Source: Macrostomum hystrix (taxonomy: Eukaryota > Animalia > Platyhelminthes). From it: a stretch of DNA of 64,000 nucleotides. The position numbers were made by a program, and so were the translations under genes. The DNA is taken from positions 9,982,001 to 10,046,000 of the forward strand of contig CATNEN010000007.1 in NCBI GenBank assembly GCA_950097015.1. Direction: 5' to 3'. The notes under the pieces were generated by a model, which was given only the letters and a program-made list of their open reading frames with translations, searched no databases and had not been told where the DNA came from. Below are positions 1,624 through 61,629 of this stretch, piece after piece (the stretch's first letter is position 1; every line of letters begins with the position of its first letter).

Positions 1624-2401
1624 ATGCCGCTGCTGCCGCTGCTGCTGTTGCTCGCGTCACCATGGCAACAATCGGGCCTCTGCCTAGCTACCGATCAAGC
1701 GGCCTTCACAGCCACCATGACTGGCAACGCCTCCTACCTGGAGCTGCCCGCCTGGCGGCCGTGCATCAACGCGAGCCTCTCGCTGGAGTTCCGAGCTTCG
1801 AAGTCCTCCGGCTTGCTGCTGTACACCGAGCTGGGGCCCGGCCTCTTCCTCAACCTCAACTTATTCGAGGGCCGCCTCCAGCTGTCGCTCAATCTGGAGT
1901 CCAACGCATCGCAGGCCATAGGGCCGCTGGTTGCAGAGGCCGGGCGCGACCTCCACCTGCCGGCGACCGGGTTTCAACGGGTCGCAGTCTCTGTCAGCTC
2001 CGGCCGGGTTGCCTTCCGGCTGGGCAACCGGACCCAGACGCTGACGCTGCACAATCCGGCGGCGCAGGCGACGTCAGGGGCGGCGGCTCCTGGCGGCCCG
2101 GTGTTTCTAGGCGGCCTGCCGAGCAATCTCAACCACGACGGGTCCAGCCGAGCCTTCATCGGCGTGGTGTTCCAGGCCAGGTTCGCAGGCAGCGTGCGCA
2201 ATGTGCTGTACACCGACTGCGCCACCGGGCGGCTTAGTGCGCCAGGCATCCTGCGTCGCCAGAACAGCCACCTGCGCCGACTGCCGCCAACTTGCGATGA
2301 GGCCACCGGCTGCCTGAACGGCGGCCTCTGCCTCGTGGGCGACGACAACAAGCCGTTCTGCTTCTGCCCAGATGCCTACGTTGGACCGCGATGCGAGAGG
2401 C
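1624..2401 (+). CDS. Nrx-1: alpha-neurexin coding exon 1: signal peptide, LNS1, EGF1
   Basis: MPLLPLLLLLASP signal peptide. Laminin-G motifs (SLEFRASKSSGLLLY, VFLGGLP) and EGF CLNGGLC...CFC...YVGPRCE. Donor C|GTGAGT at 2402, phase 1. Confidence 0.92.
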
Positions 2402-3595
2402 GTGAGTTTTAGTTCCTGTTTTCTGATTGGCTGGAAGGCACTATTTGTGATAAATGGGACGTGGCACTCCGTCATTGGCTTGCCAGGGGACGAGATTCTG
2501 TCTGACGTGGCGCTATCCTATTGGCTGGTTGAAAAACTGGCTTTTTAGTATAACTTTTTAAAGTTCTACTTGAACTTTCCCTTTTTTTTGAGTAGGTTCT
2601 TGAGTAGGTTCTTGAGAAGGTTCTTGAGAAGGTTCTACTTTATTCCGGGTGTTTCTGTGCCTCAAACTAGCTCCAGCCCGTCCCGCTTGTTATTAGCGCG
2701 GCCCTGGGGCAGTCGGAAGCCCCTGAAAACACCGTGCAATTATTCTTCCTTCCTTCCCAGTCGGCTCCAGCAGTGAGAGAAAATGGGCCAGCAGAGAAAG
2801 AAGGCGGAGAAGATGATGAGATTGACCGGCGCGCTGGCCCCCTCGCTGCTGGCAGGGCCAGGGAGGAGGTGTTGCGTGACACCGGCTGATTTGAGCCCTC
2901 GGAATGGGCTGGGCGGTGGGAGGGCCGGCCGCGTGATGAGGCAGGAAGCTGGGCCCGGGGCCGGACCGAGGACGCTATGATTTTCGAAGCCAGGCAGAAA
3001 AGGAGAAGGAGAAAGTGGGTAGAGGGAAAAGTGTGGAAATCACTCTCGGAGCAGATGAGGGCCGGCCCGGCGCGTTCCCTCATTCTCACACTTAATTTTC
3101 GCCGACACTGCAACTGGGTGGCTGCCAGCATCTCCCAGACCCGCAGTTTCCGCGCCTCCCCTCGCCCGCATCGATTCCGCCCGGGCAATCGCGCGGGGGC
3201 CTTTGAGCCCCGTCTTTTCTCTTTTTTCCTCCTGCGGCTGCTCCGCCCGCTGCCGCCGCTTCCATTCGGAGAGTATCGAACTCGGCCGATCAATGAATTC
3301 CCCAGCAGCTTCAGCAGCCGCTGCCGTCTTCTTTCTTCCGCTTCTGAGGAGGCGAATTGGGGATTCTTTGGCAGAAGGAGGTCACGCGACCCGAGGGGGC
3401 ACTAAATGTAATGGGATATCGGCTGCTGCTGCCCTGGCCTGGAGGGGGTCAGAATGATTTCTGTCTTCACAGGTGATGCCGCAAGGACTTTGGAATGGTG
3501 AATAGAGCCGCGGACCTTCAGCTAACAGCTGAAAGCGAAACGTCATCCGCACACCCGAACACTATTGCAGTCCCTTAAACTGTTTTGTGTTCACG

Positions 3596-8655: not shown

Positions 8656-10066
8656 CTGAGCCATAGCTGATAGAGCTGTCAGCCCTCAGTCAGGTCAGCT
8701 GAATTCAGTTATGCTTGCTCACCAGCTCAGCCAGTTGAAAGCCATTGAATTCTTAGTTTTCCTGGAATAAAACCCCATTCATGGCGGTATGAATGGGCCA
8801 TTCAGATCTCTTCTCTTTTTTAATCTTCATTCTTGAGTCTTATCAAATTGCCTGAGGAAGACTCAATTCAAATCCCGCTGAAGATTGGGCTGGCACAGGA
8901 AGGGGGAGGGTGACTTGTGGGAAAAGGGAAACGGGGAAAAGGCACAGAGACAAGCTTGGGAGTCGAGTGAAAGGGAGGAGAAAACGCCCACTTCCGCTCC
9001 CCAATTTCTGCGCTGATCGGGCAGTGGATACCGGGGATCGGGTCCCGCTGCCAAAACATCCGCCCGCAAATTCAAAGGGGAATTCAGTCGGGCTGAATTG
9101 TTCCCAAATCCCAGACCGCAGATTGCATTCTCCCTGCCATTCTGCGCTCAACGCTAGTGCGCTAGACCCGGGTCCAGCACCGGGGGACAAGGCAGGGCTC
9201 GTTTTATGGCGGGAATTTAGATTCGGTGTCAATGAGCTCAGTCCCATCCAGATGGTCGATGAGCACTTTAGGGCCCTTAAAAATATCTGAACTCTGAACT
9301 GAACTAAACTGAACTCTGGTGAAACTGAACTATCCCGAAACTGAACTCACCCGAAACGAACTGAACTCCTCATAAACTGAATTCGCAAGAAACTGAATTC
9401 CTCAAAAACTGAAATCTCCCGAATGTACTCGTAGGTCCTAAAAACATTAACTCAACCGAAACTGAACTCAAAGTGAAGTCTTGCACAATTCCTGTCTGCT
9501 ATTGTTTTTTTCGGGCCTGTTCTTCGTTCTCATCCTCTTTCTAGCATTCAACTCCAAAGACTTCAATAACGAAGTGCCGTCCCGAATGGCCCGGCGGCCG
9601 GAGCCAGGGCGAACAGCTTGTTCAACTTTGACGGCGGCCCAGAGAAAAAAGCAGCAAAAATGAAAGCGTTTTCTGCCAACACGGCGCCTGTCCGCCAGGC
9701 CTGTCAAGCCGCTAATGACCGGACAGACTCCGAGAAATAATAAGACTTTCCTCAGGCTGCCGCTTATTGCCAGAATGGGGCGAGCCAGCCTTTGAGGATA
9801 ATCAGAACCGGAGGAGGTGGGGCCGGCGGGGAAGAAAAATGGGCCTTCAAAAAAGTTTTCTCCAAGTTGTCCGCCAGCAGAAAATGATGACTTGCGAATA
9901 CTGGGCTCGGCGGGGCTGGGGGCCGCAGCGGCGTGAATCATTTGCCTGCGAACCCGAAAATTGGCTGTGTTTATGGCCGGGCCGGCCCTCTTTGAGGACT
10001 TTGGACGCCAAGGATTGGGAAGAAAAAGGAGGCTGAGACAGAGCACACGGGAGGCAGACAGAGGCC

Positions 10067-10918
10067 GCCTACCCTCTGAGGCATGAGAGAAAGATAAGCC
10101 TGTTAGTAGCCTACCCTCTGAGGCATGAGAGAAAGATAAGCCTGTTAGTAGCCTACTCTCTGAGGCATGAGAAAGATAAGCCTGTTAGTAGCCTACTCTC
10201 TGAGGCATGAGAAAGATAAGCCTGTTAGTATCCTACTCTCTGAGGCATGAGAAAGATAAGCCTGTTAGTATCCTACTCTCTGAGGCATGAGAAAGATAAG
10301 CCTGTTAGTAGCCTACCCTCTGAGGCATGAGAGAAAGATAAGCCTGTTAGTAGCCTACCCTCTGAGGCATGAGAGAAAGATAAGCCTGTTAGTAGCCTAC
10401 TCTCTGAGGCATGAGAAAGATAAGCCTGTTAGTAGCCTACCCTCTGAGGCATGAGAAAGATAAGCCTGTTAGTAGCCTACTCTCTGAGGCATGAGAAAGA
10501 TAAGCCTGTTAGTATCCTACTCTCTGAGGCATGAGAGAAAGATAAGCCTGTTAGTAGCCTACCCTCTGAGGCATGAGAAAGATAAGCCTGTTAGTAGCCT
10601 ACTCTCTGAGGCATGAGAAAGATAAGCCTGTTATTAGCCTACTCTCTGAGGCATGAGAAAGATAAGCCTGTTATTAGCCTACTCTCTGAGGCATGAGAAA
10701 GATAAGCCTGTTAGTATCCTACTCTCTGAGGCATGAGAAAGATAAGCCTGTTAGTAGCCTACCCTCTGAGGCATGAGAAAGATAAGCCTGTTAGTAGCCT
10801 ACTCTCTGAGGCATGAGAAAGATAAGCCTGTTATTAGCCTACTCTCTGAGGCATGAGAAAGATAAGCCTGTTAGTATCCTACTCTCTGAGGCATGAGAAA
10901 GATAAGCCTGTTAGTAGC
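10067..10918. repeat. 40/42-bp minisatellite (CCTACTCTCTGAGGCATGAGAAAGATAAGCCTGTTAGTAG)n
   Basis: About 21 copies. Confidence 0.97.
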
Positions 10919-11436
10919 TTGAGACAGGCTGAGAATTGGAAGCTGAGAATAGCAAAAAAGGAGAAGCCTGTGAAAAGCAGAAAATTTAAGGTAGCAGCTT
11001 CGATGCAAACAATTAATTATGGACGTTGTTAATTTGTTCTGGTGAATGATGCCGCATTTCAAGCCTTCCGATTCAGTGCCACGAAGGAACCGCGAGACGC
11101 TGTGGCTGAAACGGTTCAGCGGGAAATGGCTCCTCATTGGCTGAACTGGCGATTGGCCGATCGCCCACGGCAAAGCAGAGAGCTAGTGGGATTTCGGCCA
11201 GGGTGAGGAGAGGAGGGGCCGGGACCGGGACCGGATTAAGAAGGCTTCCTAAAAACAGGCGAGTGTTCAGTTTTCTGCCAACTTTCCCCGCCGCAAACCT
11301 GCCGAAACACTTCCAACCATTGTGACTGGGACTTGCTGCACCACTAGCGCGGGGCAGATCCCAGAGCTTTAATTCGATCTCGGATCCCAGCAACTGGTGC
11401 TACCTGACTCACCTGCGGCACCGGGGGGCGCCAGCG

Positions 11437-11500
11437 ATGCCGCGGTCCGTTCTGAGGCTCTGCCTGCTAGCCCTGATGGCCCAAACCGCATGGCAGCTCG
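11437..11500 (+). CDS. candidate alternative first coding exon of neurexin (second signal peptide)
   Basis: ATG with G at -3, MPRSVLRLCLLALMAQTAWQL, donor CG|GTGAGC, phase 1 matching exon 2. Two ATTGG (inverted CCAAT) boxes about 300 nt upstream. Confidence 0.6.
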
Positions 11501-11619
11501 GTGAGCAGGGGGGTAGGTTTCGGCCATAGACATTCTCGAGCAAGAGGGGCTAAAAGTACAACTACTAATAGTAAAATCTTCAGCAGCAAGCAAAAGTGCA
11601 ATTCAGAAGAGAATTCCAA

Positions 11620-12749
11620 CCTTAGGTAGGTTCCATCTCCCAATCCTCAGGTAGGTTCCATCTCCCAATCCTGAGGTAGGTTCCATCTCCCAATACTCAG
11701 GTAGGTTCCATCTCCCAATCCTGAGGTAGGTTCCATCTCCCAATACTCAGGTAGGTTCCATCTCCCCAATCTTCAGGTAGGTTCCATCTCCCTAATCCTC
11801 AGGTAGGTTCCATCTCCCTAATCCTCAGGTAGGTTCCATCTCCCAATCCTCAAGTAGGTTCCATCTCCCAATCCTCAGGTAGGTTCCATCTCCCCTATCC
11901 TCAGGTAGGTTCCATCTCCCAATCCTCAGGTAGGTTCCATCTCCCAATCCTGAGGTAGGTTCCATCTCCCAATCCTCAGGTAGGTTCCATCTCCCAATCC
12001 TCAGGTAGGTTCCATCTCCCAATCCTCAGGTAGGTTCCATCTCCCAATCCTCAGGTAGGTTCAATCTCCCAATCCTCAGGTAGGTTCCATCTCCCCAATC
12101 TTCAGGTAGGTTCCATCTCCCCAATCCTCAGGTAGGTTCCATCTCCCCAATCCTCAGGTAGGTTCCATCTCCCAATCCTCAGGTAGGTTCCATCTCCCCA
12201 ATCCTCAGGTAGGTTCCATCTCCCAATCCTCAGGTAGGTTCCATCTCCCAATCCTCAAGTAGGTTCCATCTCCCCAATCCTTAGGTAGGTTCAATCTCCC
12301 AATCCTCAGGTAGGTTCCATCTCCCAATCCTCAGGTAGGTTCCATCTCCCAATCCTCAGGTAGGTTCCATCTCCCAATCCTCAGGTAGGTTCCATCTCCC
12401 AATCCTCAGGTAGGTTCCATCTCCCAATCCTCAAGTAGGTTCCATCTCCCCAATCCTTAGGTAGGTTCAATCTCCCAATCCTCAGGTAGGTTCCATCTCC
12501 CAATCCTCAAGTAGGTTCCATCTCCCCAATCCTTAGGTAGGTTCAATCTCCCAATCCTCAGGTAGGTTCCATCTCCCAATCCTCAGGTAGGTTCCATCTC
12601 CCAATCCTCAGGTAGGTTCCATCTCCCAATCCTCAGGTAGGTTCCATCTCCCAATCCTCAGGTAGGTTCCATCTCCCAATCCTCAGGTAGGTTCCATCTC
12701 CCAATCCTCAGGTAGGTTCCATCTCCCAATCCTCAGGTAGGTTCCATCT
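11620..12749. repeat. 25/26-bp minisatellite (GTAGGTTCCATCTCCCAATCCTCAG)n
   Basis: About 45 copies. Confidence 0.97.
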
Positions 12750-14349
12750 GGAATCGTCAGGTTGGAACTACAGTTATCTTGTGTGTATGTGGTATAAAGA
12801 ATTCCTTCAGTTCATTAAGTCTCTTAGCAACAAAAGGCTGCTTAATCTGCGCGTCAACCCCGGCCGACCAGCCAGTCCCAGTAGAAGGATCATATCCCCC
12901 CAGTCCGTATCCCCGGCACGAGATAAAAATACCCCAGCGCAGCCCCAGACCGCGAACAAGCTAATCGTTTTACGGCTGGGCCCTGGTGTGTCCTTTTCCC
13001 CGCTTCTCCCGGAGCCGCCCCTTCCGCGACCAGCGGGCGGCACTTGACCCGCCTCGCGGAGCCCCAGAGCCCCACCCGCCCAGAAGTCCGCGCCGCCATT
13101 AGCTGCCCCATGTTTTACAGCCAAACACGGCCCGCCCAGGTATGGCAGCTGGGCTTGGCGAGCTTCTGGCCTCGGGGGGTGGGTGTTGCGGAGTCACAGC
13201 AGCTGCCGCAGATGGGCAGCCAGTAGTACACAGATGGAGCATGACAGCCAACGACTGCCTTTGTCCCCGCAGCTGAAACTGCCAGTTCGTTTCATCCACC
13301 GGTTGTTCCCGCTCCCCTGGGGATTTTCGCCCTCTTTCACTCCGTCTTCGTCGCATTGAAAGTTTAAAAAAGTTTTTTAAACGAATCACTCTCTTTGTGT
13401 GTGCGGCTTGGAGGTTAGTAGAAGGCGAAGGAGGTATGGGGACAGCGCTCCCAAACTCTGCAGTTTAATCCCGGGATTTTTCAATTTCAGTCCCGCACAG
13501 ACTGGGGGGGAAGAAGTGACAAGTGGCGCGCCTGACAGACAGCTGAGCTGGTAACAACCGACTCTCCAAACATCCCTCCCTGGGAATCCGATCCCGCCGG
13601 TTGGGAAGAATTCCTAAGCGCGGGCCGCACGCACGCATGCTAGCGTCCCGTTTCTACGCCGCCACGGCAAACACGGCCCAGAGCCACCGGCCTTTTGTGC
13701 CGGGCTGCTCAGCTGTCCGCTGGCCGGCTCACCAAGGCGCTGCGTGGGATGCGCGGCGTGGCATTCCCAACAGCCCGTATCCCACCCGGCCTGGCCCGCT
13801 GGTCCGGCCATTCTCTTTCAGGCCTTTCTAGCGAGCGTCCGTGACGCCCTGTGTGCGGAGGAAGGCAGAAAGACACTCAGTGCTGGGGTGCCATGCAAAG
13901 GGCTTTAATCAGTCGGGCGCGTGTCCGCTTGAGCAGAAAACGGCAGCTCGGATCCCGCAGCGAGGGACGAGCGGCAGCCAAGAGCCGGGGCTTTCTGCTC
14001 AATTTTCTGCTCCAACTGGGCTGGGGAAGCCGAGGCGACAGGCCAGGAGGGTTGGAGGGGCCAGAATTGGATTCTAGCTGGCCCAGCTCCGAGGTGCTAA
14101 CCCAGTTTGGTCCGCGGGATTTATTCAATCACCGCGCCGCTCCCCTTGCCTCTGGAAGCCGGTGGAGTCCGCGCGGAGTCCGCCACGAAGAGTGCGGGAC
14201 GGCAGCCTCCGAATGGGCGAAAATGGCGAAAGAAGATGGGAGAGAAGAGGCCTTCCAAACTTGAGTGCTCCAGTTTGAGTCTAGTGCTCATCTGAGGACT
14301 CTAAATTCACCGAAGTCTCAGTGGCCATCCGCCCCCCTTCAATCCGCAG

Positions 14350-14502
14350 AGAAGGACGAAGTGCCGACAACCTTCAACGGCCGGGGCCACATCCAGCTGG
14401 ACATCAACGACAGGCAGCACGTCTGGGGCTTCCACGGAGCCTCCGACATGCTGCGGCTGCACTACAGGACCCGGGCTCGCAACGCCTTCCTCGTCTATGC
14501 CG
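14350..14502 (+). CDS. Nrx-1: alpha-neurexin exon 2: start of LNS2
   Basis: Acceptor CCGCAG|, reads (Q)KDEVPTTFNGRGHIQLD...LHYRTRARNAFLVYAG, donor G|GTGAGC. 153 nt, phase 1-1. Confidence 0.88.
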
Positions 14503-14678
14503 GTGAGCAGGGATCTGCGAATCCCCACGCACCCCAGCCTCCCTAATTCTCCCTGCCATCTCACTCTCGGCTTGCTTTCACTTTGACTAAATTATCCAGA
14601 CTCCATGGGACTTCCTGCTTTATTAATGTTTGTCTCACTGTAAGAAGTCTCTTCACATTGGGAAAATTCCTCTCTAAT

Positions 14679-15592
14679 TCTCCCTACCCCCTCTCCCATC
14701 CCACTCTGCCAACTCACTCTCCCATCCCACTCTCCCATCCCACTCTCCCATCCGACTCTCCCATCCCACTCTCCCATCCCACTCTGCCAACTCACTCTCC
14801 CATCCCACTCTCCCATCCCACTCTCCCATCCGACTCTCCCATCCCACTCTCCCATCCCACTCTGCCAACTCACTCTCCCATCCCACTCTCCCATCCCACT
14901 CTCCCATCCCACTCTCCCATCCCACTCTCCCATCCCACTCTCCCATCCCACTCTGCCAACTCACTCTCCCATCCCACTCTGCGAACTCACTCTCCCATCC
15001 CACTCTCCCATCCCACTCTGCCAACTCACTCTCCCATCCCACTCTCCCATCCCACTCTGCCAACTCACTCTCCCATCCCACTCTCCCATCCCACTCTCCC
15101 ATCCCACTCTCCCATCCCACTCTCCCTACCCCCTCTCCCATCCCACTCTGCCAACTCACTCTCCCATCCCACTCTCCCATCCCACTCTCCCATCCGACTC
15201 TCCCATCCCACTCTCCCATCCCACTCTCCCATCCCACTCTCCCATCCCACTCTCCCATCCCACTCTGCGAACTCACTCTCCCATCCCACTCTCCCATCCC
15301 ACTCTGCCAACTCACTCTGCCATCCCACTCTGCCAACTCACTCTCCCATCCCACTCTCCCATCCCACTCTGCCAACTCACTCTCCCATCCCACTCTGCCA
15401 ACTCACTCTGCCATCCCACTCTCCCATCCCACTCTCACATCCCACTCTCCTATCCCACTCTCCCATCCCACTCTGCCAACTCACTCTCCCATCCCACTCT
15501 CCCATCCCACTCTCCCATCCCACTCTCCCATCCCACTCTCCCATCCTACTCTCCCATCCCACTCTCCCATCCCACTCTCCCATCCCACTCTG
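14679..15592. repeat. 13-bp minisatellite (CTCTCCCATCCCA)n
   Basis: Direct reading, with CTCTGCCAACTCA variants. Confidence 0.96.
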
Positions 15593-17126: not shown

Positions 17127-17311
17127 GCTCCAAGGACTCCGGCCAGTGGGATTTCATCGCCCTCAGCTTGCGGGAGGGCCGCCTTCGCCTGTCCATGTCT
17201 GTCGGCGGCTCCGCCAGCGCCGCTGACATTTCGCCACCGGCTGGCGGCCGGCCGGGGCAGTTCGCTGACAGCCAGTGGCACCGGCTGCAGGTGAAGCGCA
17301 GCCTGCAGAAG
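17127..17311 (+). CDS. Nrx-1: alpha-neurexin exon 3: LNS2
   Basis: Acceptor GACAG|, reads GSKDSGQWDFIALSLREGRL...FADSQWHRLQVKRSLQK, donor AAG|GTGAGG. Phase 1-0. Ends at the position equivalent to vertebrate SS2. Confidence 0.9.
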
Positions 17312-18593: not shown

Positions 18594-19536
18594 GTAAATG
18601 TATAATATTCCCCATTTATTTTGTTGTCTAGCGGGCAAAAGCAAGAGGTTTCTCGTTTATGAGTGAGATACCGAGTGCTTTTGGCCCTAGACAACTAAAT
18701 GAGTGGGGAAAATGATATGTATCCCTAACTTGAAACGGGCAAACGGACGAGGTCAGAAAATGTATTGATTATTGATTCGTTCGCTCGTTTAATTATGTTT
18801 GTCTATGGTTGTGTTATAGTTCTGTGCTTTAGTTAATTTATTTGCATCGGTGCAAAGTGAAATAAATAATTTATTGCACTAGTGCAAATAAATTAAAAGC
18901 TTAAAAGCATAGACAACTGCCCGGGGCAAGTGGGGGGATACATGTGAGGGCTGTGCCCCACACTCCCGAACCTCATTGGAATTCTCTATACAGGATAGAA
19001 AATATAACTCGTCCTTCTTAGTCTATGGCTCAACACTCTATCCACCAACGAATCAGAAACAGAGAGTACAATAGACTTTATAATTTCAATGCGCGGCTGT
19101 GCCTATCAGTTTGTGACCGTCAATTAAATAATCTGATGAGACTATGTGAGTTTAGTAAAAGTGCTTTACCTGTTTCCAATTCTTAGTGTGTGTAGTTTAA
19201 GTCTAAGTGTGTAGTAGTGTACACTTTTCTTAATATTTCTAAGCTATAAGCGCTGCTCTAAGTGTATGAACTTTTAGCATTTGGTTATTATACGCTCGTA
19301 CTAGAGTATATAATATAGTATATAAATAGTATAAAAATAGTATATATTGGAGTAAAGATCTAAACATGTGCGCCTTGACGTCAGGGTTATTATATTCAGA
19401 CAATTAAGCATGTTTTGTCAAACCAATATGATATACTAATGTGCCTTACTAATAAAACTATTATCTATATTAACCGACTTCTCTCTTATCAAATCAGCAC
19501 AAATCAAACATCAAGCATCAAGCGTAATTTAGCCAA

Positions 19537-22500
19537 TCTTTCTTTCTAATATACTAAAAATGAAAATCTTGTATGTTTGTTTGCAATCGACTAGCTCCCG
19601 AACGGCTCAACCGATTTTCACAATTCCTTCGCCAAAAGATCACAAATAGGCCGGAATCGGTACACGTAATTTTATTAAGCTTAATTCCATTGGCAAGGGG
19701 ATTAAATATTCGAAAAACAGTTTTAAATAGGCTTTTCTAATGCATTCTTGTTTTCAGCTTGTGCACAGTGAGGCTCCAGTGTTAACTTTAATGATTGCAT
19801 CAGAGCCAATTTTGATAAGGCACTGATAAGAACTCAATGGAGGCTACCCAGAGGGTAGCGAAGGCAGCTAGTCTAATATACTAAAAATGAAAATCTTGCT
19901 TGCTTGCTTGTTTGCAATCGACTAGCTCCCGAACGGCTCAACCGATTTTCAAAATTCCTTCGCCAAAAGATCACAAATGGGCCGGAATCGGTACACGTAA
20001 TTTTATTAAGCTTAATTCCATTGCCAAGGGGATTAAATATTCGAAAAACAGTTTTAAATAGGCTTTTCTAATGCATTCTTGTTTTCAGCTTGTGCACAGT
20101 GAGGCCTCCAGTGCCAATTTTAATGATTGCATCAGAGCCAGTTTTGATAACGCACGCGCGTACTGATAAGAACTCACAGGGAGGCTACCCAGAGGGTAGC
20201 GAAGGCAGCTAGTCTTCTAATATACTAAAAATGAAAATCTTGTATGTTTGTATGTTTGCAATCGACTAGCTCCCGAACGGCTCAACCGATTTTCGCAATT
20301 CCTTCGCTAAAAGATCACAATTGGTCCCGAATCGGTACACGTATTTTTATTAAGCTTAATTCCATTGCCAAGGGGATTAAATATTCGAAAAACAGTTTTA
20401 AATAGGCTTTTCTAATGCATTCTTGTTTTCAGCTTGTGCTCAGTGAGGCCTCCAGTGCCAATTTTAATGATTGCATCAGAGCCAGTTTTGATAACGAACT
20501 GATAAGAACTCACAGGGAGGCTACCCAGAGGGTAGCGAAGGCAGCTAGTCTAATATACTAAAAATGAAAATCTTGCTTGCTTGTATGTTTGCAATCGACT
20601 AGCTCCCGAACGGCTTAACCGATTTTCGCAATTCCTTCGCCAAAAGATCACAAATGGGCCGGAATCGGTACACGTAATTTTATTAAGCTTAATTCCATTG
20701 GCAAGGGGATTAAATATTCGAAAAACAGTTTTAAATAGGCTTTTCTAATGCATTCTTGTTTTCAGCTTGTGCACAGTGAGGCCTCCAGTGCCAATTTTAA
20801 TGATTGCATCAGAGCCAGTTTTGATAACGCACGCGCGTACTGATAAGAACTCACAGGGAGGCTACCCAGAGGGTAGCGAAGGCAGCTAGTATATACTAAA
20901 AATGAAAATCTTGTATGTTTGCAATCGACTAGCTCCCGAACGGCTCAACCGATTTTTGCAATTCCTTCGCCAAAAGATCACAAATGGGCCCGAATCGGTA
21001 CACATATTTTTATTAAGCTCAATTCCATTGCCAAGGGGATTAAATATTCGAAAAACAGTTTTAAATAGGCTTTTCTAATGCATTCTTGTTTTTAGCTTGT
21101 GCACAGTGAGGCCTCCAGTGCCAAATTTAATGATTGCATCAGAGCCTGCAGTTTTGATAACACACGCGTACTGATAAGAACTCACAGGGAGGCTACCCAG
21201 AGGGTAGCAAAGGCAGCTAGTCTTCTATCTAATATACTAAAAATGAAAATCTTGCTTGCTTGCTTGCTTGTATGTTTGCAATCGACTAGCTCCCGAACGG
21301 CTCAACCGATTTTCACAATTCCTTCGCCAAAAGATCACAAATGGGCCGGAATCGGTACACGTATTTTTATTAAGCTTAATTCCATTGCCAAGGGGATTAA
21401 ATATTCGAAAAACTGTTTTAAATAGGCTTTTCTAATGCATTCTTGTTTTCAGCTTGTGCACAGTGAGGCCTCCAGTGCCAATTTTAATGATTGCATCAGA
21501 GCCAATTTTGATAACGCACTGATAAGAACTCAAGGTAGGCTACCCAGAGGGTAGCGAAGGGCAGCTAGTAATATACTAAAAATGAAAATCTTGCTTGCTT
21601 GCTTGTATGTTTGCAATCGACTAGCTCCCGAACGGCTTAACCGATTTTCACAATTCCTTCGCCAAAAGATCACAATTGGGCCGGAATCGGTACACGTAAT
21701 TTTATTAAGCTTAATTCCATTGCCAAGGGGATTAAATATTCGAAAAACAGTTTTAAATAGGCTTTTCTAATGCATTCTTGTTTACAGCTTGTGCACAGTG
21801 AGGCCTCCAGTGCCAATTTTAATGATTGCATCAGAGCCAGTTTTGATAACGAACTGATAAGAACTCCAGTGAGGCTACCCAGAGGGTAGCGAAGGCAGCT
21901 AGTCTAATATACTAAAAATGAAAATCTTGCTTGCTTGTTCGTAATTGATTTTCTCCCGAACGGCTCAACCAATTTTCACCATTTCTTCACCAAAAGATGC
22001 CAAATATGGGGACAACTATACACGTATTTTTATTAAGCTTAATTCCATTGCCAAGGGGATTAAATATTCGAAAAACTGTTTTAAATAGGCTTTTCTAATG
22101 CATTCTTGTTTTCAGCTTGTGCACAGTGAGGCCTCCAGTGCCAATTTTAATGATTGCATCAGAGCCAGTTTTGATAACGCACGCGCGTACTGATAAGAAC
22201 TCACAGGGAGGCTACCCAGAGGGTAGCGAAGGCAGCTAGTCTAATATACTAAAAATGAAAATCTTGTATGTTTGTATGTTTGCAATCGACTAGCTCCCGA
22301 ACGGCTCAACCGATTTTTGCAATTCCTTCGCCAAAAGATCACAAATGGGCCCGAATCGGTACACATATTTTTATTAAGCTCAATTCCATTGCCAAGGGGA
22401 TTAAATATTCGAAAAACAGTTTTAAATAGGCTTTTCTAATGCATTCTTGTTTTTAGCTTGTGCACAGTGAGGCCTCCAGTGCCAAATTTAATGATTGCAT

Positions 22501-25500
22501 CAGAGCCTGCAGTTTTGATAACACACGCGTACTGATAAGAACTCACAGGGAGGCTACCCAGAGGGTAGCAAAGGCAGCTAGTCTTCTATCTAATATACTA
22601 AAAATGAAAATCTTGCTTGCTTGCTTGCTTGTATGTTTGCAATCGACTAGCTCCCGAACGGCTCAACCGATTTTCACAATTCCTTCGCCAAAAGATCACA
22701 AATGGGCCGGAATCGGTACACGTATTTTTATTAAGCTTAATTCCATTGCCAAGGGGATTAAATATTCGAAAAACTGTTTTAAATAGGCTTTTCTAATGCA
22801 TTCTTGTTTTCAGCTTGTGCACAGTGAGGCCTCCAGTGCCAATTTTAATGATTGCATCAGAGCCAATTTTGATAACGCACTGATAAGAACTCAAGGTAGG
22901 CTACCCAGAGGGTAGCGAAGGGCAGCTAGTAATATACTAAAAATGAAAATCTTGCTTGCTTGCTTGTATGTTTGCAATCGACTAGCTCCCGAACGGCTTA
23001 ACCGATTTTCACAATTCCTTCGCCAAAAGATCACAATTGGGCCGGAATCGGTACACGTAATTTTATTAAGCTTAATTCCATTGCCAAGGGGATTAAATAT
23101 TCGAAAAACAGTTTTAAATAGGCTTTTCTAATGCATTCTTGTTTACAGCTTGTGCACAGTGAGGCCTCCAGTGCCAATTTTAATGATTGCATCAGAGCCA
23201 GTTTTGATAACGAACTGATAAGAACTCCAGTGAGGCTACCCAGAGGGTAGCGAAGGCAGCTAGTCTAATATACTAAAAATGAAAATCTTGTATGTTTGTA
23301 TGTTTGCAATCGACTAGCTCCCGAACGGCTCAACCGATTTTCGCAATTCCTTCGCTAAAAGATCACAATTGGTCCCGAATCGGTACACGTATTTTTATTA
23401 AGCTTAATTCCATTGCCAAGGGGATTAAATATTCGAAAAACAGTTTTAAATAGGCTTTTCTAATGCATTCTTGTTTTCAGCTTGTGCTCAGTGAGGCCTC
23501 CAGTGCCAATTTTAATGATTGCATCAGAGCCAGTTTTGATAACGAACTGATAAGAACTCACAGGGAGGCTACCCAGAGGGTAGCGAAGGCAGCTAGTCTA
23601 ATATACTAAAAATGAAAATCTTGCTTGCTTGTATGTTTGCAATCGACTAGCTCCCGAACGGCTTAACCGATTTTCGCAATTCCTTCGCCAAAAGATCACA
23701 AATGGGCCGGAATCGGTACACGTAATTTTATTAAGCTTAATTCCATTGGCAAGGGGATTAAATATTCGAAAAACAGTTTTAAATAGGCTTTTCTAATGCA
23801 TTCTTGTTTTCAGCTTGTGCACAGTGAGGCCTCCAGTGCCAATTTTAATGATTGCATCAGAGCCAGTTTTGATAACGCACGCGCGTACTGATAAGAACTC
23901 ACAGGGAGGCTACCCAGAGGGTAGCGAAGGCAGCTAGTCTTCTAATATACTAAAAATGAAAATCTTGTATGTTTGTATGTTTGCAATCGACTAGCTCCCG
24001 AACGGCTCAACCGATTTTTGCAATTCCTTCGCCAAAAGATCACAAATGGGCCCGAATCGGTACACATATTTTTATTAAGCTCAATTCCATTGCCAAGGGG
24101 ATTAAATATTCGAAAAACAGTTTTAAATAGGCTTTTCTAATGCATTCTTGTTTTTAGCTTGTGCACAGTGAGGCCTCCAGTGCCAAATTTAATGATTGCA
24201 TCAGAGCCTGCAGTTTTGATAACACACGCGTACTGATAAGAACTCACAGGGAGGCTACCCAGAGGGTAGCAAAGGCAGCTAGTCTTCTAATATACTAAAA
24301 ATGAAAATCTTGCTTGCTTGTATGTTTGCAATCGACTAGCTCCCAAACGGCTCAACCGATTTTCGCAATTCCTTCGCCAAAAGATCGCAAATGGGCCGGA
24401 ATCGGTACACGTAATTTTATTAAGCTTAATTCCATTGGCAAGGGGATTAAATATTCGAAAAACAGTTTTAAATAGGCTTTTCTAATGCATTCTTGTTTTC
24501 AGCTTGTGCACAGTGAGGCTCCTGTGCCAATTTTAATGATTGCATCAGAGCCAATTTTGATAAGGCACTGATAAGAACTCAAAGGAGGCTACCCAGAGGG
24601 TAGCGAAGGCAGCTAGTCTAATATACTAAAAATGAAAATCTTGCTTGCTTGCTTGTATGTTTGCAATCGACTAGCTCCCGAACGGCTTAACCGATTTTCA
24701 CAATTCCTTCGCCAAAAGATCACAATTGGGCCGGAATCGGTACACGTAATTTTATTAAGCTTAATTCCATTGCCAAGGGGATTAAATATTCGAAAAACAG
24801 TTTTAAATAGGCTTTTCTAATGCATTCTTGTTTACAGCTTGTGCACAGTGAGGCCTCCAGTGCCAATTTTAATGATTGCATCAGAGCCAGTTTTGATAAC
24901 GAACTGATAAGAACTCCAGTGAGGCTACCCAGAGGGTAGCGAAGGCAGCTAGTCTAATATACTAAAAATGAAAATCTTGCTTGCTTGTATGTTTGCAATC
25001 GACTAGCTCCCGAACGGCTTAACCGATTTTCGCAATTCCTTCGCCAAAAGATCACAAATGGGCCGGAATCGGTACACGTATTTTTATTAAGCTTAATTCC
25101 ATTGCCAAGGGGATTAATTATTCAAAAAACAGTTTTAAATAGGCTTTTCTAATGCATTCTTGTTTTCAGCTTGTGCACAGTGAGGCTCCAGTGCCAATTT
25201 TTATGATTGCATCAGAGCCAGTTTTGATAACGAACTGATAAGAACTCCAGTGAGGCTACCCAGAGGGTAGCGAAGGCAGCTAGTCTAATATACTAAAAAT
25301 GAAAATCTTGTTTGTATGTTTGTATGTTTGCAATCGACTAGCTCCCGAACGGCTCAACCGATTTTCAAAATTCTTTCACTAAAAGATCGCAAATGGGCCG
25401 GAATCGGTACACGTAATTTTATTAAGCTTAATTCCATTGGCAAGGGGATTAAATATTCGAAAAACAGTTTTAAATAGGCTTTTCTAATGCATTCTTGTTT

Positions 25501-25792
25501 TCAGCTTGTGCACAGTGAGGCCTCCAGTGCCAATTTTAATGATTGCATCAGAGCCAGTTTTGATAACGCACTGATAAGAACTCCAGTGAGGCTACCCAGA
25601 GGGTAGCGAAGGCAGCTAGTCCACTATACTAAAAATGAAATGGTTGGTTGGTTGGTTGTAATTGATTTTTTCCTGAACGGCTCAACCGATTTTCACCATT
25701 TCTTCACCAAAAGATGCTAAATATGGGGACAATTATACACGTATTTTTATTAAGCTTAACTTTATTGCTAAGAGGATTAAATATTCGAAAAA
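19537..25792 (+). mobile_element. tandem head-to-tail array of about 338-bp non-autonomous Helitrons (18 complete plus one 3-prime truncated)
   Basis: Units start (TCTA)ATATACTAAAAATG with variable first bases and carry a short GTTT/GCTT/GTAT microsatellite. Each ends with the hairpin GCTACCC-AGA-GGGTAGC, 8-9 nt, then CTAG|T. No TIRs or TSD. Confidence 0.85.
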
Positions 25793-26209
25793 CATGCTTT
25801 TTTCAAAGGTCAAACCATCTTGGCCTATTGAGAATTTCACTGACAGCCACTGAATTAGAATTGCATCGTCAAATTGCGCAACAACCCCTAGCTGATTGAA
25901 TTTGAAGCCTGCACTCTGGAGACAAATTGGAAATAAATGTACACAACCAACCGCGAGACTGAGTGTACTCTATTTTCTTACTTCATTGTACAAAGCCAGA
26001 ACTTTGAGAATTCATTTTATAAGGCTGATTTTTGCACCCACTAACCAACAGTCGGAATAGCCGATGTGTAGGCACTAGGAATAGGTTAGGCTAGGCTAGG
26101 GTTCGATTCTGCACTGCGTCAAATCATTTAGACTAATTTTCAGCCAGTAGTGATTGAAGATTATTTTAATTTATTTTTTCATTTCGTAAATAAAATATCA
26201 TAAATCATA

Positions 26210-45174: not shown

Positions 45175-45553
45175 GAATGCTCGCCATGTCACCGCCGAAC
45201 CACCTGGACCATCCGGTGGTGGCCGCCGGCCTGACTGGCCGGTCCCCACCGAGGCTCCGGCGGACAGCGATGGCACCCGTGAGACCAAAGCCGCCGGTGG
45301 CCAGCAATCTTCGGCAAAAATCGACATCTTCATCATCGTGATTGTAGCCGCCTCAGGCGCCGTGCTATTGTTCGTGTTCTTCTGCCTGATCTACCGCTGC
45401 CGTAGCAAGAACGAAGGCTCCTACCGGGTTGACGAGACCCAGAACTTCGAGGATCCGGCGTTGAAACCGCTGCGCGGCGCCGCCCACGCAAACGGCGACG
45501 TGCGAACGAAGATGGCCACCAAGAAGCGGGACATCAAAGAGTGGTACGTGTGA
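45175..45553 (+). CDS. Nrx-1: alpha-neurexin exon 15: TM and cytoplasmic tail
   Basis: Acceptor ACGCAG| (phase 2). TM IFIIVIVAASGAVLLFVFFCLIY, juxtamembrane RSKNEGSYRVDE, and PDZ-binding end KKRDIKEWYV*, diagnostic of neurexins. Confidence 0.95.
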
Positions 45554-58880: not shown

Positions 58881-59562
58881 CTATTCCTCGCTGGCTTAGG
58901 CAAAAAACACGAGTTCGAGTTCCTCGAGACGCTGTCAGATAATAAAAGAATTACCTTTAGCACGTTCTAAGCTTGTGTATCTTTCAGTTCGAAGGGCTGT
59001 AACTGACTGCCGACTAAGGAGCTAAGATGCAACTTATCTGCTTTGTAGTTGCACCTATTGACCCGCTTTTGTCTATACAGTGATTTTCATTGAATAAACT
59101 TTCTTCTAAGATGATAAAATTCCTCGATCAGAATTCTTATCTTAAAGTTTGTTTCTTTAAGCATTTTTCTAAAAATAAGTGTTGCATAGAAAGGACGTAC
59201 AACGGTACAATACGCAAGCATGACGTGCGTTCTGGCGTTTTAATCAAGTCTGGACACTGCACGTTTCTCGGTAGGTCTATTCGGTGCAGGGCAGATTTCA
59301 GCTTTCTATACGCAACTGACTCACAGCACAGTGCATGTTGGGGCATATAATAAGATCCACATTGGGTTGGAGATATGGAGCCGCGGGTGAGAAATGTACA
59401 GAGTGCAGCCCCACCGAGTACTATAGCAGCTACAGCGTGCGGCGAGGACCTCATGCACGGTGCTGGCAGTTGTACAGCAGTTTCAAGCCTTAATTACAGA
59501 GCCCTCCATTTATCGCACACTAAAGCTGTGCTGGGTATCCGACTGCAGCGCCAAATAGCAAT

Positions 59563-61629
59563 ATGAAGATCCTTGTAGTATTTAACTCGGTTAATGATAT
59601 TGTGTTCTGCCATGCTAATCAGGCCTACCTGGTCAACCTGTTGGCCGACTTTCGAGGCTCCGTCGAGTCCGGAGATGCTTCTCTGTCCAGGCAGACATTG
59701 GACATTCTCGTGCAGCTATTCTCGCCTTTGCTGACGACGTACAACTTGATGCGAACTCAGCAGTCGGCCTATCGCCGGGTCATTCTGGCCAACAATGAAG
59801 AGCTCGTGTTTAGACGCTGCGAAGACTTTCTCATGATCGGCGTATTCGGCGCGAAGACATTCTGCCCACCAGCGAAGCAGTTAGCAAATGTGGAGCGGCA
59901 GCTTCGGTCTCTGGTCGGGCCGTACTTCGAAGTGCTCAAGCAGCATAGAGAAGGCGCCTTCAGCCTCGTCGGCAGCATGGTGTCCGGCTGGAAGACCCTG
60001 TTCACTCACGAGCTGGCGTTCACATTTTCCGCAGTGGAGCGCGTTAAGGTGGAGGGGAGCATCAAGGCCAGGGCAATCGAATCTATTGAGCGCGGCTTTC
60101 TGCGGAGGCGTCGCGACCTGAGCGGTGTGGAGCATGTGCTTATAGTGTGCGGCACCAAGCTTCTGTGCTTGTATTCCACAGAACGGACAAGCAAGCTGGT
60201 TGCACAAGATTTTCTCACCATAATATCTTTAGTTCCGGCTTTGTTCCCCAAATTCGACGTCTATGATGAGAGTCGCTACAAGGAGCCACCAGAAGTGGCG
60301 GCGTTCAACAGCTGCGCCGAGCCGACCAACAGTTCAAGCAATAGTGATGTTTCGTCAGCATTTCACTCGTGCAATGAATTGGTTCTCTCAACGCCTCACA
60401 GTGGACGGAGCTCGGGTCTGGCTACCACGCCTGACCGAATCAATGGAGCATTCGGTGCCTCCCAACGGCACTCCACATCCTCATCAGGCAGCTGCATCGA
60501 ACTGGAGCACAATGCTCACTATCCCCTTGTGCAGCAGATAGAACTAAACAAGAGTGCGCCGTCCGAATCTAAAGTGATTTTGGTGTTCCTTAGCACAACT
60601 ACATCGACATTATCCCCCTTCAAAGTGCACTTCGTACCGCTGACAGGAAACGTTGTCTTTATTGCTCTTGAGACCGTGGAGCCGCGCTCTGTAGCTCGGC
60701 TGGTGGACCGGATGCACCGGGCGGCGGACCGAGCACAAAGTCACGTGAACCAGCCAGTTTCCGATTTAGCAACTTCCCAAGCTGCCATTTGCAGTGAGCT
60801 GCACACGATCAGGCGACTCCTGGGCGAGCTGATTCGAACCCTGCGGGAGCCGCCTGGCCTGGCTGTTGGCTTCGTGCCGGCTTGCGAGCGAGCTATGCGT
60901 GACATCAGCGACCACCTGAGCAGAGTAGCGCCTGGAAGCGACGCTTTTCGCACCGTGGATCTTTACCTAAACACTGTAGAGAACTTGCTGCACAAGCTGA
61001 AGTCGTCGGTCATGAAAGGAATCTTCGAGAACCTCTTCCTGCAGTTTCCGTTTAAGATGACAGCCACTGTAAGCCAGGCTGTGCAGGACCTGGCCCTGGG
61101 TTGCCGAAAAGATCTGCAGGACTACTTGCCATTTCTTGACGTAAAGGCGCGCAGAAACCTAGCATCATCCAGTGTGCTGGCTAGTTACAGTGGTCTGGTG
61201 CACTTCGCCCTGGTGGACAGGCGCAGCGATGAAATTGTGGCCCCGACACCCGACTGGGGCCGCCAGCCGAAGGGGCTCCCGAAGCGCATCCTTGCCACCA
61301 TTGGAGCCCTGCGCGACGCTGCCCACGCAGTGAAAGCTCGCGAGCGCGACCACCCCGGAACTGGCGGATCTGTGATGGACACCGGCGGTGAGGTAGCCCG
61401 CAGAAAGGAAGTCCAGCTCTACCAGCGCGACCGGAACTACCAGTATAGCTACCTCATGCAGTGGGAGCAGGCGAATGCAGATCCCAAATTATTGGACCCC
61501 GGATTCGAGCTAGCGACTGTTCATTCGCTAGAGGTCAGTCGCGACGCTATTCAGCGACATCTGATCAGCCTGGCCGACAAGTTCCTGCCCAGCAGGGACA
61601 GTCCAGACTTCGACAATGGCCTCCTGTGA
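59563..61629 (+). CDS. HPS1: Hermansky-Pudlak syndrome 1-like protein (BLOC-3 subunit), single-exon ORF, 688 aa
   Basis: N-terminus MKILVVFNSVNDIVF resembles invertebrate HPS1. TKLLCLYS, DYLPFLDVKARRN and SGLVHFALVDRRSDEIVAP resemble HPS1 motifs (e.g. PGLVHFIYVDR...APS). AATAAA at 62030. Confidence 0.82.
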   Translation: MKILVVFNSVNDIVFCHANQAYLVNLLADFRGSVESGDASLSRQTLDILVQLFSPLLTTYNLMRTQQSAYRRVILANNEELVFRRCEDFLMIGVFGAKTFCPPAKQLANVERQLRSLVGPYFEVLKQHREGAFSLVGSMVSGWKTLFTHELAFTFSAVERVKVEGSIKARAIESIERGFLRRRRDLSGVEHVLIVCGTKLLCLYSTERTSKLVAQDFLTIISLVPALFPKFDVYDESRYKEPPEVAAFNSCAEPTNSSSNSDVSSAFHSCNELVLSTPHSGRSSGLATTPDRINGAFGASQRHSTSSSGSCIELEHNAHYPLVQQIELNKSAPSESKVILVFLSTTTSTLSPFKVHFVPLTGNVVFIALETVEPRSVARLVDRMHRAADRAQSHVNQPVSDLATSQAAICSELHTIRRLLGELIRTLREPPGLAVGFVPACERAMRDISDHLSRVAPGSDAFRTVDLYLNTVENLLHKLKSSVMKGIFENLFLQFPFKMTATVSQAVQDLALGCRKDLQDYLPFLDVKARRNLASSSVLASYSGLVHFALVDRRSDEIVAPTPDWGRQPKGLPKRILATIGALRDAAHAVKARERDHPGTGGSVMDTGGEVARRKEVQLYQRDRNYQYSYLMQWEQANADPKLLDPGFELATVHSLEVSRDAIQRHLISLADKFLPSRDSPDFDNGLL

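What the first reader, a model, noticed from the sequence alone, without database searches (positions are those of the whole stretch)
11130..11506. Hidden second start exon with its own signal peptide: a neurexin isoform beginning at LNS2
Seen: inside the 12-kb first intron, ATG 11437 (G at -3) opens MPRSVLRLCLLALMAQTAWQL, with a basic n-region, hydrophobic core and polar c-region. It ends after 64 nt at CG|GTGAGC in phase 1, the phase needed to join exon 2 (giving ...WQL-EKDEVPTTF). Two inverted CCAAT boxes lie at about 11136-11156. The segment is a GC-rich unique island between two minisatellites and is too short for the ORF track. Established: neurexin genes use internal promoters with private first exons to make beta (LNS6 only) and gamma (no LNS) isoforms, and LNS1-EGF1 is flexibly tethered to the LNS2-LNS6 core. 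Inference: an internal promoter makes a 1330-aa, five-LNS neurexin lacking LNS1-EGF1, a class I do not recognise among alpha/beta/gamma. Alternatively, 11471-11500 (TAG acceptor, 30 nt) could act as an SS1-type cassette exon.
Basis: partly seen in the sequence, partly recalled or inferred. Interest (0 to 1): 0.85.

Follow-up and report, generated by a model that had tools for sequence, protein, structure and literature searches.

The report
Second start exon in flatworm neurexin
A flatworm neurexin gene has a small extra start exon inside its first intron. Public RNA data show it spliced to exon 2, so the animal should also make a synaptic adhesion protein that lacks its first two domains, a form not described for neurexins.

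Summary

**What the sequence shows**
- ATG 11437 opens a 21-codon signal-peptide-like ORF. It ends at 11500 before GTGAGC, in phase 1.
- This lies in the 11,948-nt intron 1 of an alpha-type neurexin gene (exon 1 at 1624-2401, exon 2 at 14350-14502, C-terminus ...KEWYV at 45550).

**RNA evidence**
- The only public run that holds the stretch (X1) has contigs on 11249-11400 and 11415-11500.
- Their overhangs past 11500 read exactly window 14350-14379. The predicted 11500->14350 junction therefore exists in RNA.
- ATG 11437 is the first ATG of the covered exon. All three frames are closed upstream, so the exon cannot be a coding cassette.
- There is no pyrimidine-rich AG acceptor upstream. Two NF-Y-type inverted CCAAT boxes sit about 100 nt before the first covered base.

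**Conservation**
- The paralogue on contig C10 has the same arrangement. This scan found it earlier on that other DNA (s1-273993).
- Its exon resembles the N-terminus of Macrostomum lignano PAA86589.1, which runs from a signal peptide straight into LNS2.
- A schistosome annotation lists six-LNS and five-LNS isoforms that diverge at the same boundary.

**Not shown:** the transcription start, the protein, and signal-peptide function. Reviews list only alpha, beta and gamma isoforms.

Verdict: a real new variant of a known kind.

The parts
11134..11158 (+). Two inverted CCAAT boxes (ATTGG at 11136-11140 and 11152-11156), both matching the NF-Y-type context YSATTGGYY. Candidate core of an internal promoter, 97-113 nt before the first RNA-covered base.
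   Evidence: There are only 7 such sites in 64 kb on both strands, and four of them form two tight pairs.
11249..11500 (+). Alternative 5' exon, minimum extent as covered by RNA contigs (252 nt). It has a 188-nt leader without any ATG, then the coding part.
   Evidence: contigs lie on 11249-11400 and 11415-11500, with none on 10930-11248 or 11510-11625; no upstream ATG, and stops in all three frames.
11437..11500 (+). Coding part of the alternative exon: ATG plus 20 further codons (n-region with two Arg, hydrophobic core LCLLALMA, polar end) plus 1 base. It ends in phase 1.
11501..14349 (+). Intron removed from the alternative transcript (GT...AG, 2849 nt). It contains the 25-mer minisatellite at 11616-12749.
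   Evidence: overhangs at 11500 equal the start of exon 2.
14350..14502 (+). Exon 2, shared by both forms; start of LNS2 (…KDEVPTTFNGRG…). It is entered in phase 1 and left in phase 1.
1624..2401 (+). Exon 1 coding part, specific to the alpha form: its own signal peptide, LNS1 and EGF1. The donor is C|GTGAGT in phase 1.
   Evidence: (Laminin_G and EGF by Pfam).
10067..10918 (.). 40-nt minisatellite bordering the island on the 5' side.
11616..12749 (.). 25-nt minisatellite bordering the island on the 3' side.
45209..45550 (+). Last coding exon of the same gene: transmembrane segment and cytoplasmic tail ending KEWYV (PDZ-binding type). It shows that the gene is a true neurexin.
   Evidence: (Syndecan-type tail by Pfam).

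Best explanation
The stretch is an alternative first exon of an alpha-type neurexin gene of a Macrostomum-like flatworm.

Transcription starts inside intron 1, at or shortly before 11249. It is probably driven by a TATA-less promoter with two inverted CCAAT boxes at 11136-11156.

The exon (at least 11249-11500) has a leader free of AUG and then AUG 11437, which opens a 21-residue signal peptide. Its GT donor at 11501 is spliced to the ordinary acceptor of exon 2 at 14350, in phase 1.

The signal peptide is therefore followed directly by LNS2. The product would be a membrane neurexin with LNS2-LNS3-EGF2-LNS4-LNS5-EGF3-LNS6, the stalk, the transmembrane segment and the KEWYV tail, but without LNS1 and EGF1. 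It would keep the LNS2 and LNS6 ligand sites and lose whatever binds LNS1.

Shown: the exon is in RNA, the junction is exact, AUG 11437 is the first AUG, the frame fits, and a paralogue and M. lignano have the same design.

Inferred: the internal promoter, cleavage of the signal peptide, and the existence and role of the protein.
For: 1. Junction.
- X1 contigs lie on 11249-11400 and 11415-11500.
- The overhangs at 11500 read AGAAGGACGAAGTGCCGACAACCTTCAACG, which is window 14350-14379, and occurs at no other place in the window or in the paralogue loci fetched.
- Six of the 7 contigs are at least 99% like the window.

2. First-exon character.
- There is no ATG in 11200-11436, an in-frame TGA at 11323, and stops in all three frames of 11249-11436.
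- No AG with a pyrimidine-rich tract lies in 11100-11260.
- No contig lies on 10930-11248.
- A CCAAT pair sits 97-113 nt upstream.

3. Signal peptide.
- It has a net +2 n-region, an 8-residue core of mean hydropathy about 3, and small residues at -3/-1.
- Only 3% of the control ATG-started open frames in the window pass the same rule.

4. Gene identity.
- Pfam finds Laminin_G and EGF in exon 1 and in later exons.
- The tail is ...KEWYV.
- The best homologues are M. lignano proteins, followed by neurexins of many animals.

5. Conservation.
- M. lignano PAA86589.1 (P0002) begins with a signal peptide directly followed by NLREETPTTF. The alpha-type model P0153 has EGF1 before the same residues.
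- Intron 1 of the C10 paralogue in this genome holds a 76-nt ATG exon with a phase-1 GTGAGT donor. It resembles the P0002 N-terminus (p = 0.0016 against shuffles), has a CCAAT/ATTGG pair upstream, and sits between two minisatellites.

6. Other flatworms.
- Heterobilharzia americana is annotated with six-LamG (1827 aa) and five-LamG (1580 aa) isoforms. They have private N-termini and become identical within a residue or so of the same boundary.
Against: - No 5'-end data exist (CAGE, RACE or full-length reads). The promoter is inferred, and the first covered base, 11249, is only a lower bound.
- X1 is the only run, it is kept as contigs, and its kind is not on record. That it is RNA is deduced from the spliced contigs.
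- The signal peptide was judged by a home-made rule, not SignalP, and its hydrophobic core is short (8 residues).
- The window's own exon shows no sequence similarity to the C10 or M. lignano exon (p about 0.13-0.16). What is conserved is the design, not the residues.
- The third paralogue (C39) shows no convincing counterpart.
- The M. lignano and schistosome proteins are database models that were not checked against RNA here.
Confidence: 0.72

Rival explanations
1. Poison or cassette exon. The stretch is an internal exon included between exon 1 and exon 2 of the alpha transcript. Because all frames are closed, inclusion would stop the alpha reading frame after LNS1-EGF1. That would down-regulate the gene through nonsense-mediated decay or give a short secreted fragment.
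For: No 5'-end information is available. Stops occur in all three frames of 11249-11436. A minor +4-nt junction variant (11504->14350) shows some splicing noise at this donor.
Against: - No pyrimidine-rich AG acceptor lies in 11100-11260.
- No overhang is seen at the 5' end of the 11249-11400 contig, and no contigs lie further upstream.
- A poison exon has no need for a first AUG followed by a signal-peptide ORF that ends in the one phase that fits exon 2. It would also not need that design repeated in a paralogue and in M. lignano.
Confidence: 0.1
2. Same mRNA and same protein, but no internal promoter. The 5' end is made by spliced-leader trans-splicing onto an acceptor in intron 1 of the alpha pre-mRNA. 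Macrostomum is known to use spliced leaders (my own knowledge, not tested here).
For: Flatworms of this group trans-splice many mRNAs. The true 5' end of the exon was not seen.
Against: - The 11249-11400 contig is collinear with the genome to its first base and carries no foreign leader letters.
- There is no credible acceptor (pyrimidine tract plus AG) in 11100-11260.
- Paired CCAAT boxes sit at promoter distance here and before the C10 counterpart.
Confidence: 0.1
3. Real but idle transcript. The intronic island fires at a low level and happens to splice into exon 2, but the mRNA is not translated into a stable five-LNS neurexin, or its N-terminus does not work as a signal peptide.
For: Contig depths are low (about 2.6-6). 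The signal peptide was not scored with a trained predictor. The residues are not conserved between paralogues.
Against: - The leader contains no ATG, and AUG 11437 has G at -3.
- The phase is correct and exon 2 is open.
- The design recurs in a paralogue and in M. lignano. The C10 exon resembles the M. lignano N-terminus beyond shared composition.
- A five-LamG isoform is annotated in a schistosome.
Confidence: 0.08

Closest known systems
Beta-neurexin (vertebrate Nrxn1-3 beta)
   Same: It comes from an internal promoter in an intron of the alpha gene. A private first exon supplies its own signal peptide and is spliced in frame into a shared downstream exon. The transmembrane region and tail are the same as in alpha (reviews).
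   Different: Beta joins just before LNS6 and keeps one LNS domain. Here the private exon joins at exon 2 and keeps five LNS and two EGF domains. The beta exon also encodes a beta-specific stretch, whereas here only the signal peptide is private.
Gamma-neurexin (mouse Nrxn1 gamma; the short isoform reported for C. elegans and Drosophila)
   Same: It is a further internal-promoter isoform of the same gene.
   Different: Gamma has no LNS domain at all. This form lacks only LNS1-EGF1.
Alpha-like neurexin genes with four or five LNS domains in cnidarians and placozoans (Guzman et al. 2024, PMC11294457)
   Same: They have a five-LNS ectodomain.
   Different: Those are separate genes with a fixed architecture. 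Here a six-LNS gene makes the five-LNS form as an alternative product.
M. lignano PAA86589.1 (P0002) and Heterobilharzia americana CAH8450419.1 (P0032): unnamed database models
   Same: A signal peptide or private N-terminus is followed directly by the start of LNS2. Alpha-type models of the same gene or cluster have LNS1 (and, in M. lignano, EGF1) before the same residues.
   Different: They are uncharacterised predictions in other species, and P0002 belongs to a paralogue. None is named or discussed as an isoform class in the papers searched.
LNS2-LNS6 alpha-neurexin ectodomain used for crystal structures
   Same: The domain content is the same as the predicted natural product. To my knowledge, LNS1-EGF1 is flexibly attached and was left out of or unresolved in those structures. 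This was not checked in the papers here.
   Different: That is a laboratory construct, not a natural isoform.

Membership tests
Neurexin (alpha-type gene) | Ectodomain of repeated LNS (laminin G) domains interspersed with EGF domains, in the order LNS1-EGF1-LNS2-LNS3-EGF2-LNS4-LNS5-EGF3-LNS6 | tested here: met
   Pfam finds Laminin_G and EGF in exon 1. Laminin_G pieces occur in the exons at 17150, 30967, 33912 (with EGF), 36379, 40403 and 41284. The LNS6 exons did not score alone, but they align to the M. lignano orthologue P0151 at 59-84% identity along the whole chain.
Neurexin (alpha-type gene) | Single transmembrane segment and a short tail ending in a PDZ-binding motif of the type (E/K)(W/Y)YV | tested here: met
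   The last exon ends ...KKRDIKEWYV and is preceded by a hydrophobic segment. Pfam finds a Syndecan-type tail. The same ending occurs in neurexins of many phyla.
Neurexin (alpha-type gene) | Closest relatives are annotated neurexins | tested here: met
   An HMMER search of 1.84 billion representatives gave M. lignano models first (56% and 48% identity). Next came proteins named neurexin-1 or neurexin-1a-like in a barnacle, abalone, crinoid, mite and hagfish.
Internal-promoter neurexin isoform (the kind that includes beta and gamma) | Private first exon lying in an intron of the alpha gene and spliced in frame to a shared exon | tested here: met
   The exon lies in intron 1. The 11500->14350 junction is seen in RNA contigs, with phase 1 on both sides.
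Internal-promoter neurexin isoform (the kind that includes beta and gamma) | Own transcription start, independent of the alpha promoter | not testable with these tools
   Only indirect signs are available: a CCAAT pair 97-113 nt before the first covered base, no acceptor site, and no contigs further upstream. CAGE, RACE or full-length reads are needed.
Internal-promoter neurexin isoform (the kind that includes beta and gamma) | Private exon supplies a working signal peptide | tested here: inconclusive
   It passes a crude n/h/c-region and -3/-1 rule that 3% of control ORFs pass. No trained predictor and no experiment were available.
Beta-neurexin proper | Private exon joins directly before LNS6, leaving one LNS domain | tested here: not met
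   It joins at exon 2, the start of LNS2. Five LNS domains follow.
Gamma-neurexin proper | No LNS or EGF domain; only the stalk, transmembrane segment and tail | tested here: not met
   The evidence is the same as for the beta test: five LNS domains remain.

The most novel reading that the evidence does not exclude
A five-LNS, LNS2-start neurexin made from a private signal-peptide exon in intron 1 is an old isoform class that has been kept under selection. It would be shared by free-living and parasitic flatworms, and perhaps by other spiralians: an unnamed 4.2-kb transcript contig, P0024, encodes a complete 1295-aa neurexin that goes from a signal peptide straight into LNS2. It would be regulated separately from the six-LNS form, so that cells can switch LNS1-dependent ligands on or off without touching LNS2 or LNS6 binding.
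Probability: 0.45. Interest if true: 0.72.

Novelty: new variant of a known kind. Interest (0 to 1): 0.6.

Why it matters
Neurexin diversity is thought to come from two or three promoters (alpha, beta, gamma) plus splice sites. Which ligands a neuron can engage depends on which LNS domains it displays.

A natural isoform that removes only LNS1-EGF1 would add a new axis. It keeps the LNS2 sites (neurexophilin, dystroglycan) and the LNS6 sites (neuroligin and others). It drops LNS1, which in mammals is implicated in IgSF21 binding and, together with LNS5, in binding the calcium-channel subunit alpha2delta-3 (review PMC12665717).

The exon is now shown in RNA in an animal that, from what I know, can be studied by RNAi and transgenesis. 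Its design recurs in a paralogue, in M. lignano and in a schistosome annotation. The role of LNS1 could therefore be tested with exon-specific knock-down.

It also shows that very short first exons hidden in repeat-rich introns are missed by ORF-based annotation.

Tried and rejected
As the tool itself advised, I laid the part beside it.
- **The look-up of sequencing runs** returned a single run of unrecorded kind, so there is no replicate and no tissue information.
- **The search for homologous proteins** gave nothing new in three searches:
  - exon 2 within its open frame: no candidate;
  - P0153 residues 80-220: none scored, and its cluster representative falls outside the length limit;
  - P0024 residues 1-220: only itself.
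  These blanks say little, given the length filter.
- **Rfam** on 9000-15000 found nothing meaningful.
- **CpG content** does not set the island apart, because the whole region is CpG-rich.
- **The CCAAT motif** is not enriched in the window overall (7 sites against 11.9 expected). Only the pairing and the position are notable.
- **C39 paralogue:** the best candidate exon, at C39:16057267, lies in AT-rich sequence, has no charged n-region and no CCAAT pair. It is within the false-positive rate of my scan, so I rejected it.
- **Joined peptide:** Exons were searched apart, by reference.

Full report
**1. The observation**

- ATG 11437-11439 has G at -3. It opens MPRSVLRLCLLALMAQTAWQL, and the next base (G, 11500) is followed by GTGAGC.
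- The stretch lies between a 40-nt minisatellite (10067-10918) and a 25-nt minisatellite (11616-12749).
- It is single-copy in the 220-Mb, 42-contig genome.
- ATTGG occurs at 11136 and 11152.

**2. The gene around it**

- An ORF from ATG 1624 encodes a signal peptide, a laminin-G domain and an EGF domain. It ends at a C|GTGAGT donor after 2401, in phase 1.
- Exon 2 begins at 14350 behind ...ccgcag and runs to 14502. Intron 1 is therefore 11,948 nt.
- Downstream exons were mapped by aligning two M. lignano proteins to the window. They lie at about 17150, 30967, 33912, 36379, 37472, 40403, 41284, 41954, 42706, 43020, 43922, 44379 and 45209-45550.
- Exon by exon, these give Laminin_G, EGF and a Syndecan-type tail in Pfam.
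- The protein ends ...KKRDIKEWYV, the neurexin type of PDZ-binding end seen in many phyla.
- The nearest proteins in 1.84 billion representatives are Macrostomum lignano models (56% and 48% identity over the LNS3-EGF2 exon). After them come neurexins of other animals at about 30%.
- The window is therefore an alpha-type neurexin gene of a Macrostomum-like flatworm, about 75% identical in protein to its M. lignano orthologue.
- The genome has two further paralogues, on C10 and C39.

**3. RNA evidence**

- One public run holds the stretch: X1, from 2020, with 47 million letters, kept as contigs and of unrecorded kind.
I laid 10930-11780, as the tool advised.
- Contigs lie on 11249-11400 and 11415-11500. 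None lies on 10930-11248 or on 11510-11625.
- Three contigs run on past 11500 with letters unlike the intron. The main overhang equals window 14350-14379 exactly, a string found nowhere else in the window or in the paralogue loci fetched.
- The predicted GT-AG junction 11500->14350 is thus present in that run. Because its contigs are spliced, the run must be RNA or cDNA.
- The contigs that start at 11471/11472 are what a 31-mer graph produces at the branch at 11501. The 11415-11500 contig crosses 11471 unbroken, which rules out the 30-nt cassette alternative.

**4. First exon or internal exon?**

- In the covered exon there is no ATG before 11437. An in-frame TGA lies at 11323, and all three frames are closed between 11249 and 11436. 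The exon therefore cannot carry the alpha reading frame through.
- No AG with a pyrimidine-rich tract lies in 11100-11260.
- The 5'-most contig has no foreign letters at its end.
- The two ATTGG boxes both fit the NF-Y-type context YSATTGGYY. There are only seven such sites in the window on both strands, fewer than chance overall. Even so, four of them form two tight pairs, one of them 97-113 nt before the first covered base.
- Together this favours an internal promoter. It is not proof, because no 5'-end data could be had.

**5. Signal peptide**

- The 21 residues have two Arg in the n-region, an eight-residue core of mean hydropathy about 3, and small residues at -3/-1 near the end.
- By a crude rule, 3% of the 753 ATG-started frames in the window that stay open for 21 codons pass.
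- In intron 1, only 11437 (outside the 40-mer repeat) also has a phase-1 GT donor.
- SignalP was not available, and I did not send a joined peptide to any tool.

**6. Conservation**

M. lignano:
- PAA86589.1 (P0002) starts with a signal-peptide-like 24 residues followed at once by NLREETPTTFDGRG.
- The alpha-type model P0153 of the same cluster has the end of EGF1 before the same residues.

The C10 paralogue in this genome, which is the counterpart of that M. lignano gene:
- Its intron 1 (27.4 kb) contains one strong candidate: ATG at C10:1211277 (minus strand), 25 codons, then G|GTGAGT in phase 1.
- That is also where the M. lignano N-terminus gives its only match at a candidate exon in that intron. 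The two peptides are more alike than shuffles of the same composition (p = 0.0016).
- The exon again sits between two minisatellites, with a CCAAT and an ATTGG 215-250 nt upstream.
- The scan had already reported this C10 exon (s1-273993). I reached it independently.

Limits and further cases:
- The window's own exon shares the design but not the residues.
- C39 shows nothing convincing.
- The schistosome Heterobilharzia americana is annotated with isoforms of 1827 aa (six LamG) and 1580 aa (five LamG). Their private N-termini give way to identical sequence within a residue or so of the same boundary.
- An unnamed 4.2-kb transcript contig encodes a complete 1295-aa, five-LamG neurexin that goes from a signal peptide into EKVP..., the start of the exon-2 equivalent.
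- These are database models and leads, not checked against RNA here.

**7. What is known**

- A 2025 review of alpha-neurexins and other papers list two promoters per vertebrate gene, plus a gamma promoter in Nrxn1. They report alpha and gamma forms in fly and worm.
- Cnidarians and placozoans have separate alpha-like genes with four or five LNS domains.
- Searches for an LNS1-less isoform, or for flatworm neurexins, found nothing.
- The mechanism (internal promoter, private signal-peptide exon) is that of beta-neurexin. The join point and the product differ, so this is a new variant of a known kind.

**8. Verdict**

- The exon and its junction are real (about 0.95).
- It is most likely a first exon from an internal promoter that gives a five-LNS neurexin (0.72 overall).
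- The rivals are a poison cassette exon (0.10), a trans-spliced 5' end (0.10) and an untranslated by-product (0.08).

Noticed in passing
window 14350 (first base of exon 2): About half of the junction contigs in X1 read G instead of A at the first base of exon 2 (depth 5.8 against 6.1). This would change the junction codon from Glu to Gly in the short form, and from Gln to Arg in the alpha form. It may be an allele of the sampled worms or an A-to-I edit.
   Followed up: no
window 11501-11506: A minor contig (depth 2) joins 11504 to 14350. This uses a GC donor 4 nt downstream and shifts the frame. It is probably splicing noise or an assembly error.
   Followed up: no
window 2424-2480: A second tight pair of inverted NF-Y-type CCAAT boxes (TGATTGGCT and TCATTGGCT) lies 20-80 nt after the donor of exon 1. 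A single one lies at 1449, upstream of the alpha ATG. They could mark another start site, an antisense promoter or a downstream promoter element.
   Followed up: no
window 11497-11510 and 14499-14512: The donors of the alternative exon and of exon 2 share the same 12 letters, CG|GTGAGCAGGG.
   Followed up: no
G000 C10:1178700-1232000 (-) and C39:16029800-16089000 (+): There are two further neurexin paralogues in this genome. The match to exon 1 in C39 is weak (31%) and has an in-frame TAG, so that copy may have a divergent or decayed LNS1 exon.
   Followed up: partly
window 19300-26000: A long tandem array of units of roughly 0.7-1.4 kb (even 40% GC, with the same ORF-like pieces repeating) fills much of the intron after the exon at 17150.
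   Followed up: no
window 59524-61626 (+): An open frame of 701 codons without introns lies downstream of the neurexin gene. Its start codon was not located and it was not identified.
   Followed up: no
proteins P0163/P0160 versus P0032/P0161 (Heterobilharzia americana); P0024 (unnamed transcript contig): These are public models of five-LNS neurexins whose private N-termini join at the exon-2 boundary, outside Macrostomum. The schistosome models also come with two alternative C-termini (...KEWYV and ...KEC).
   Followed up: partly
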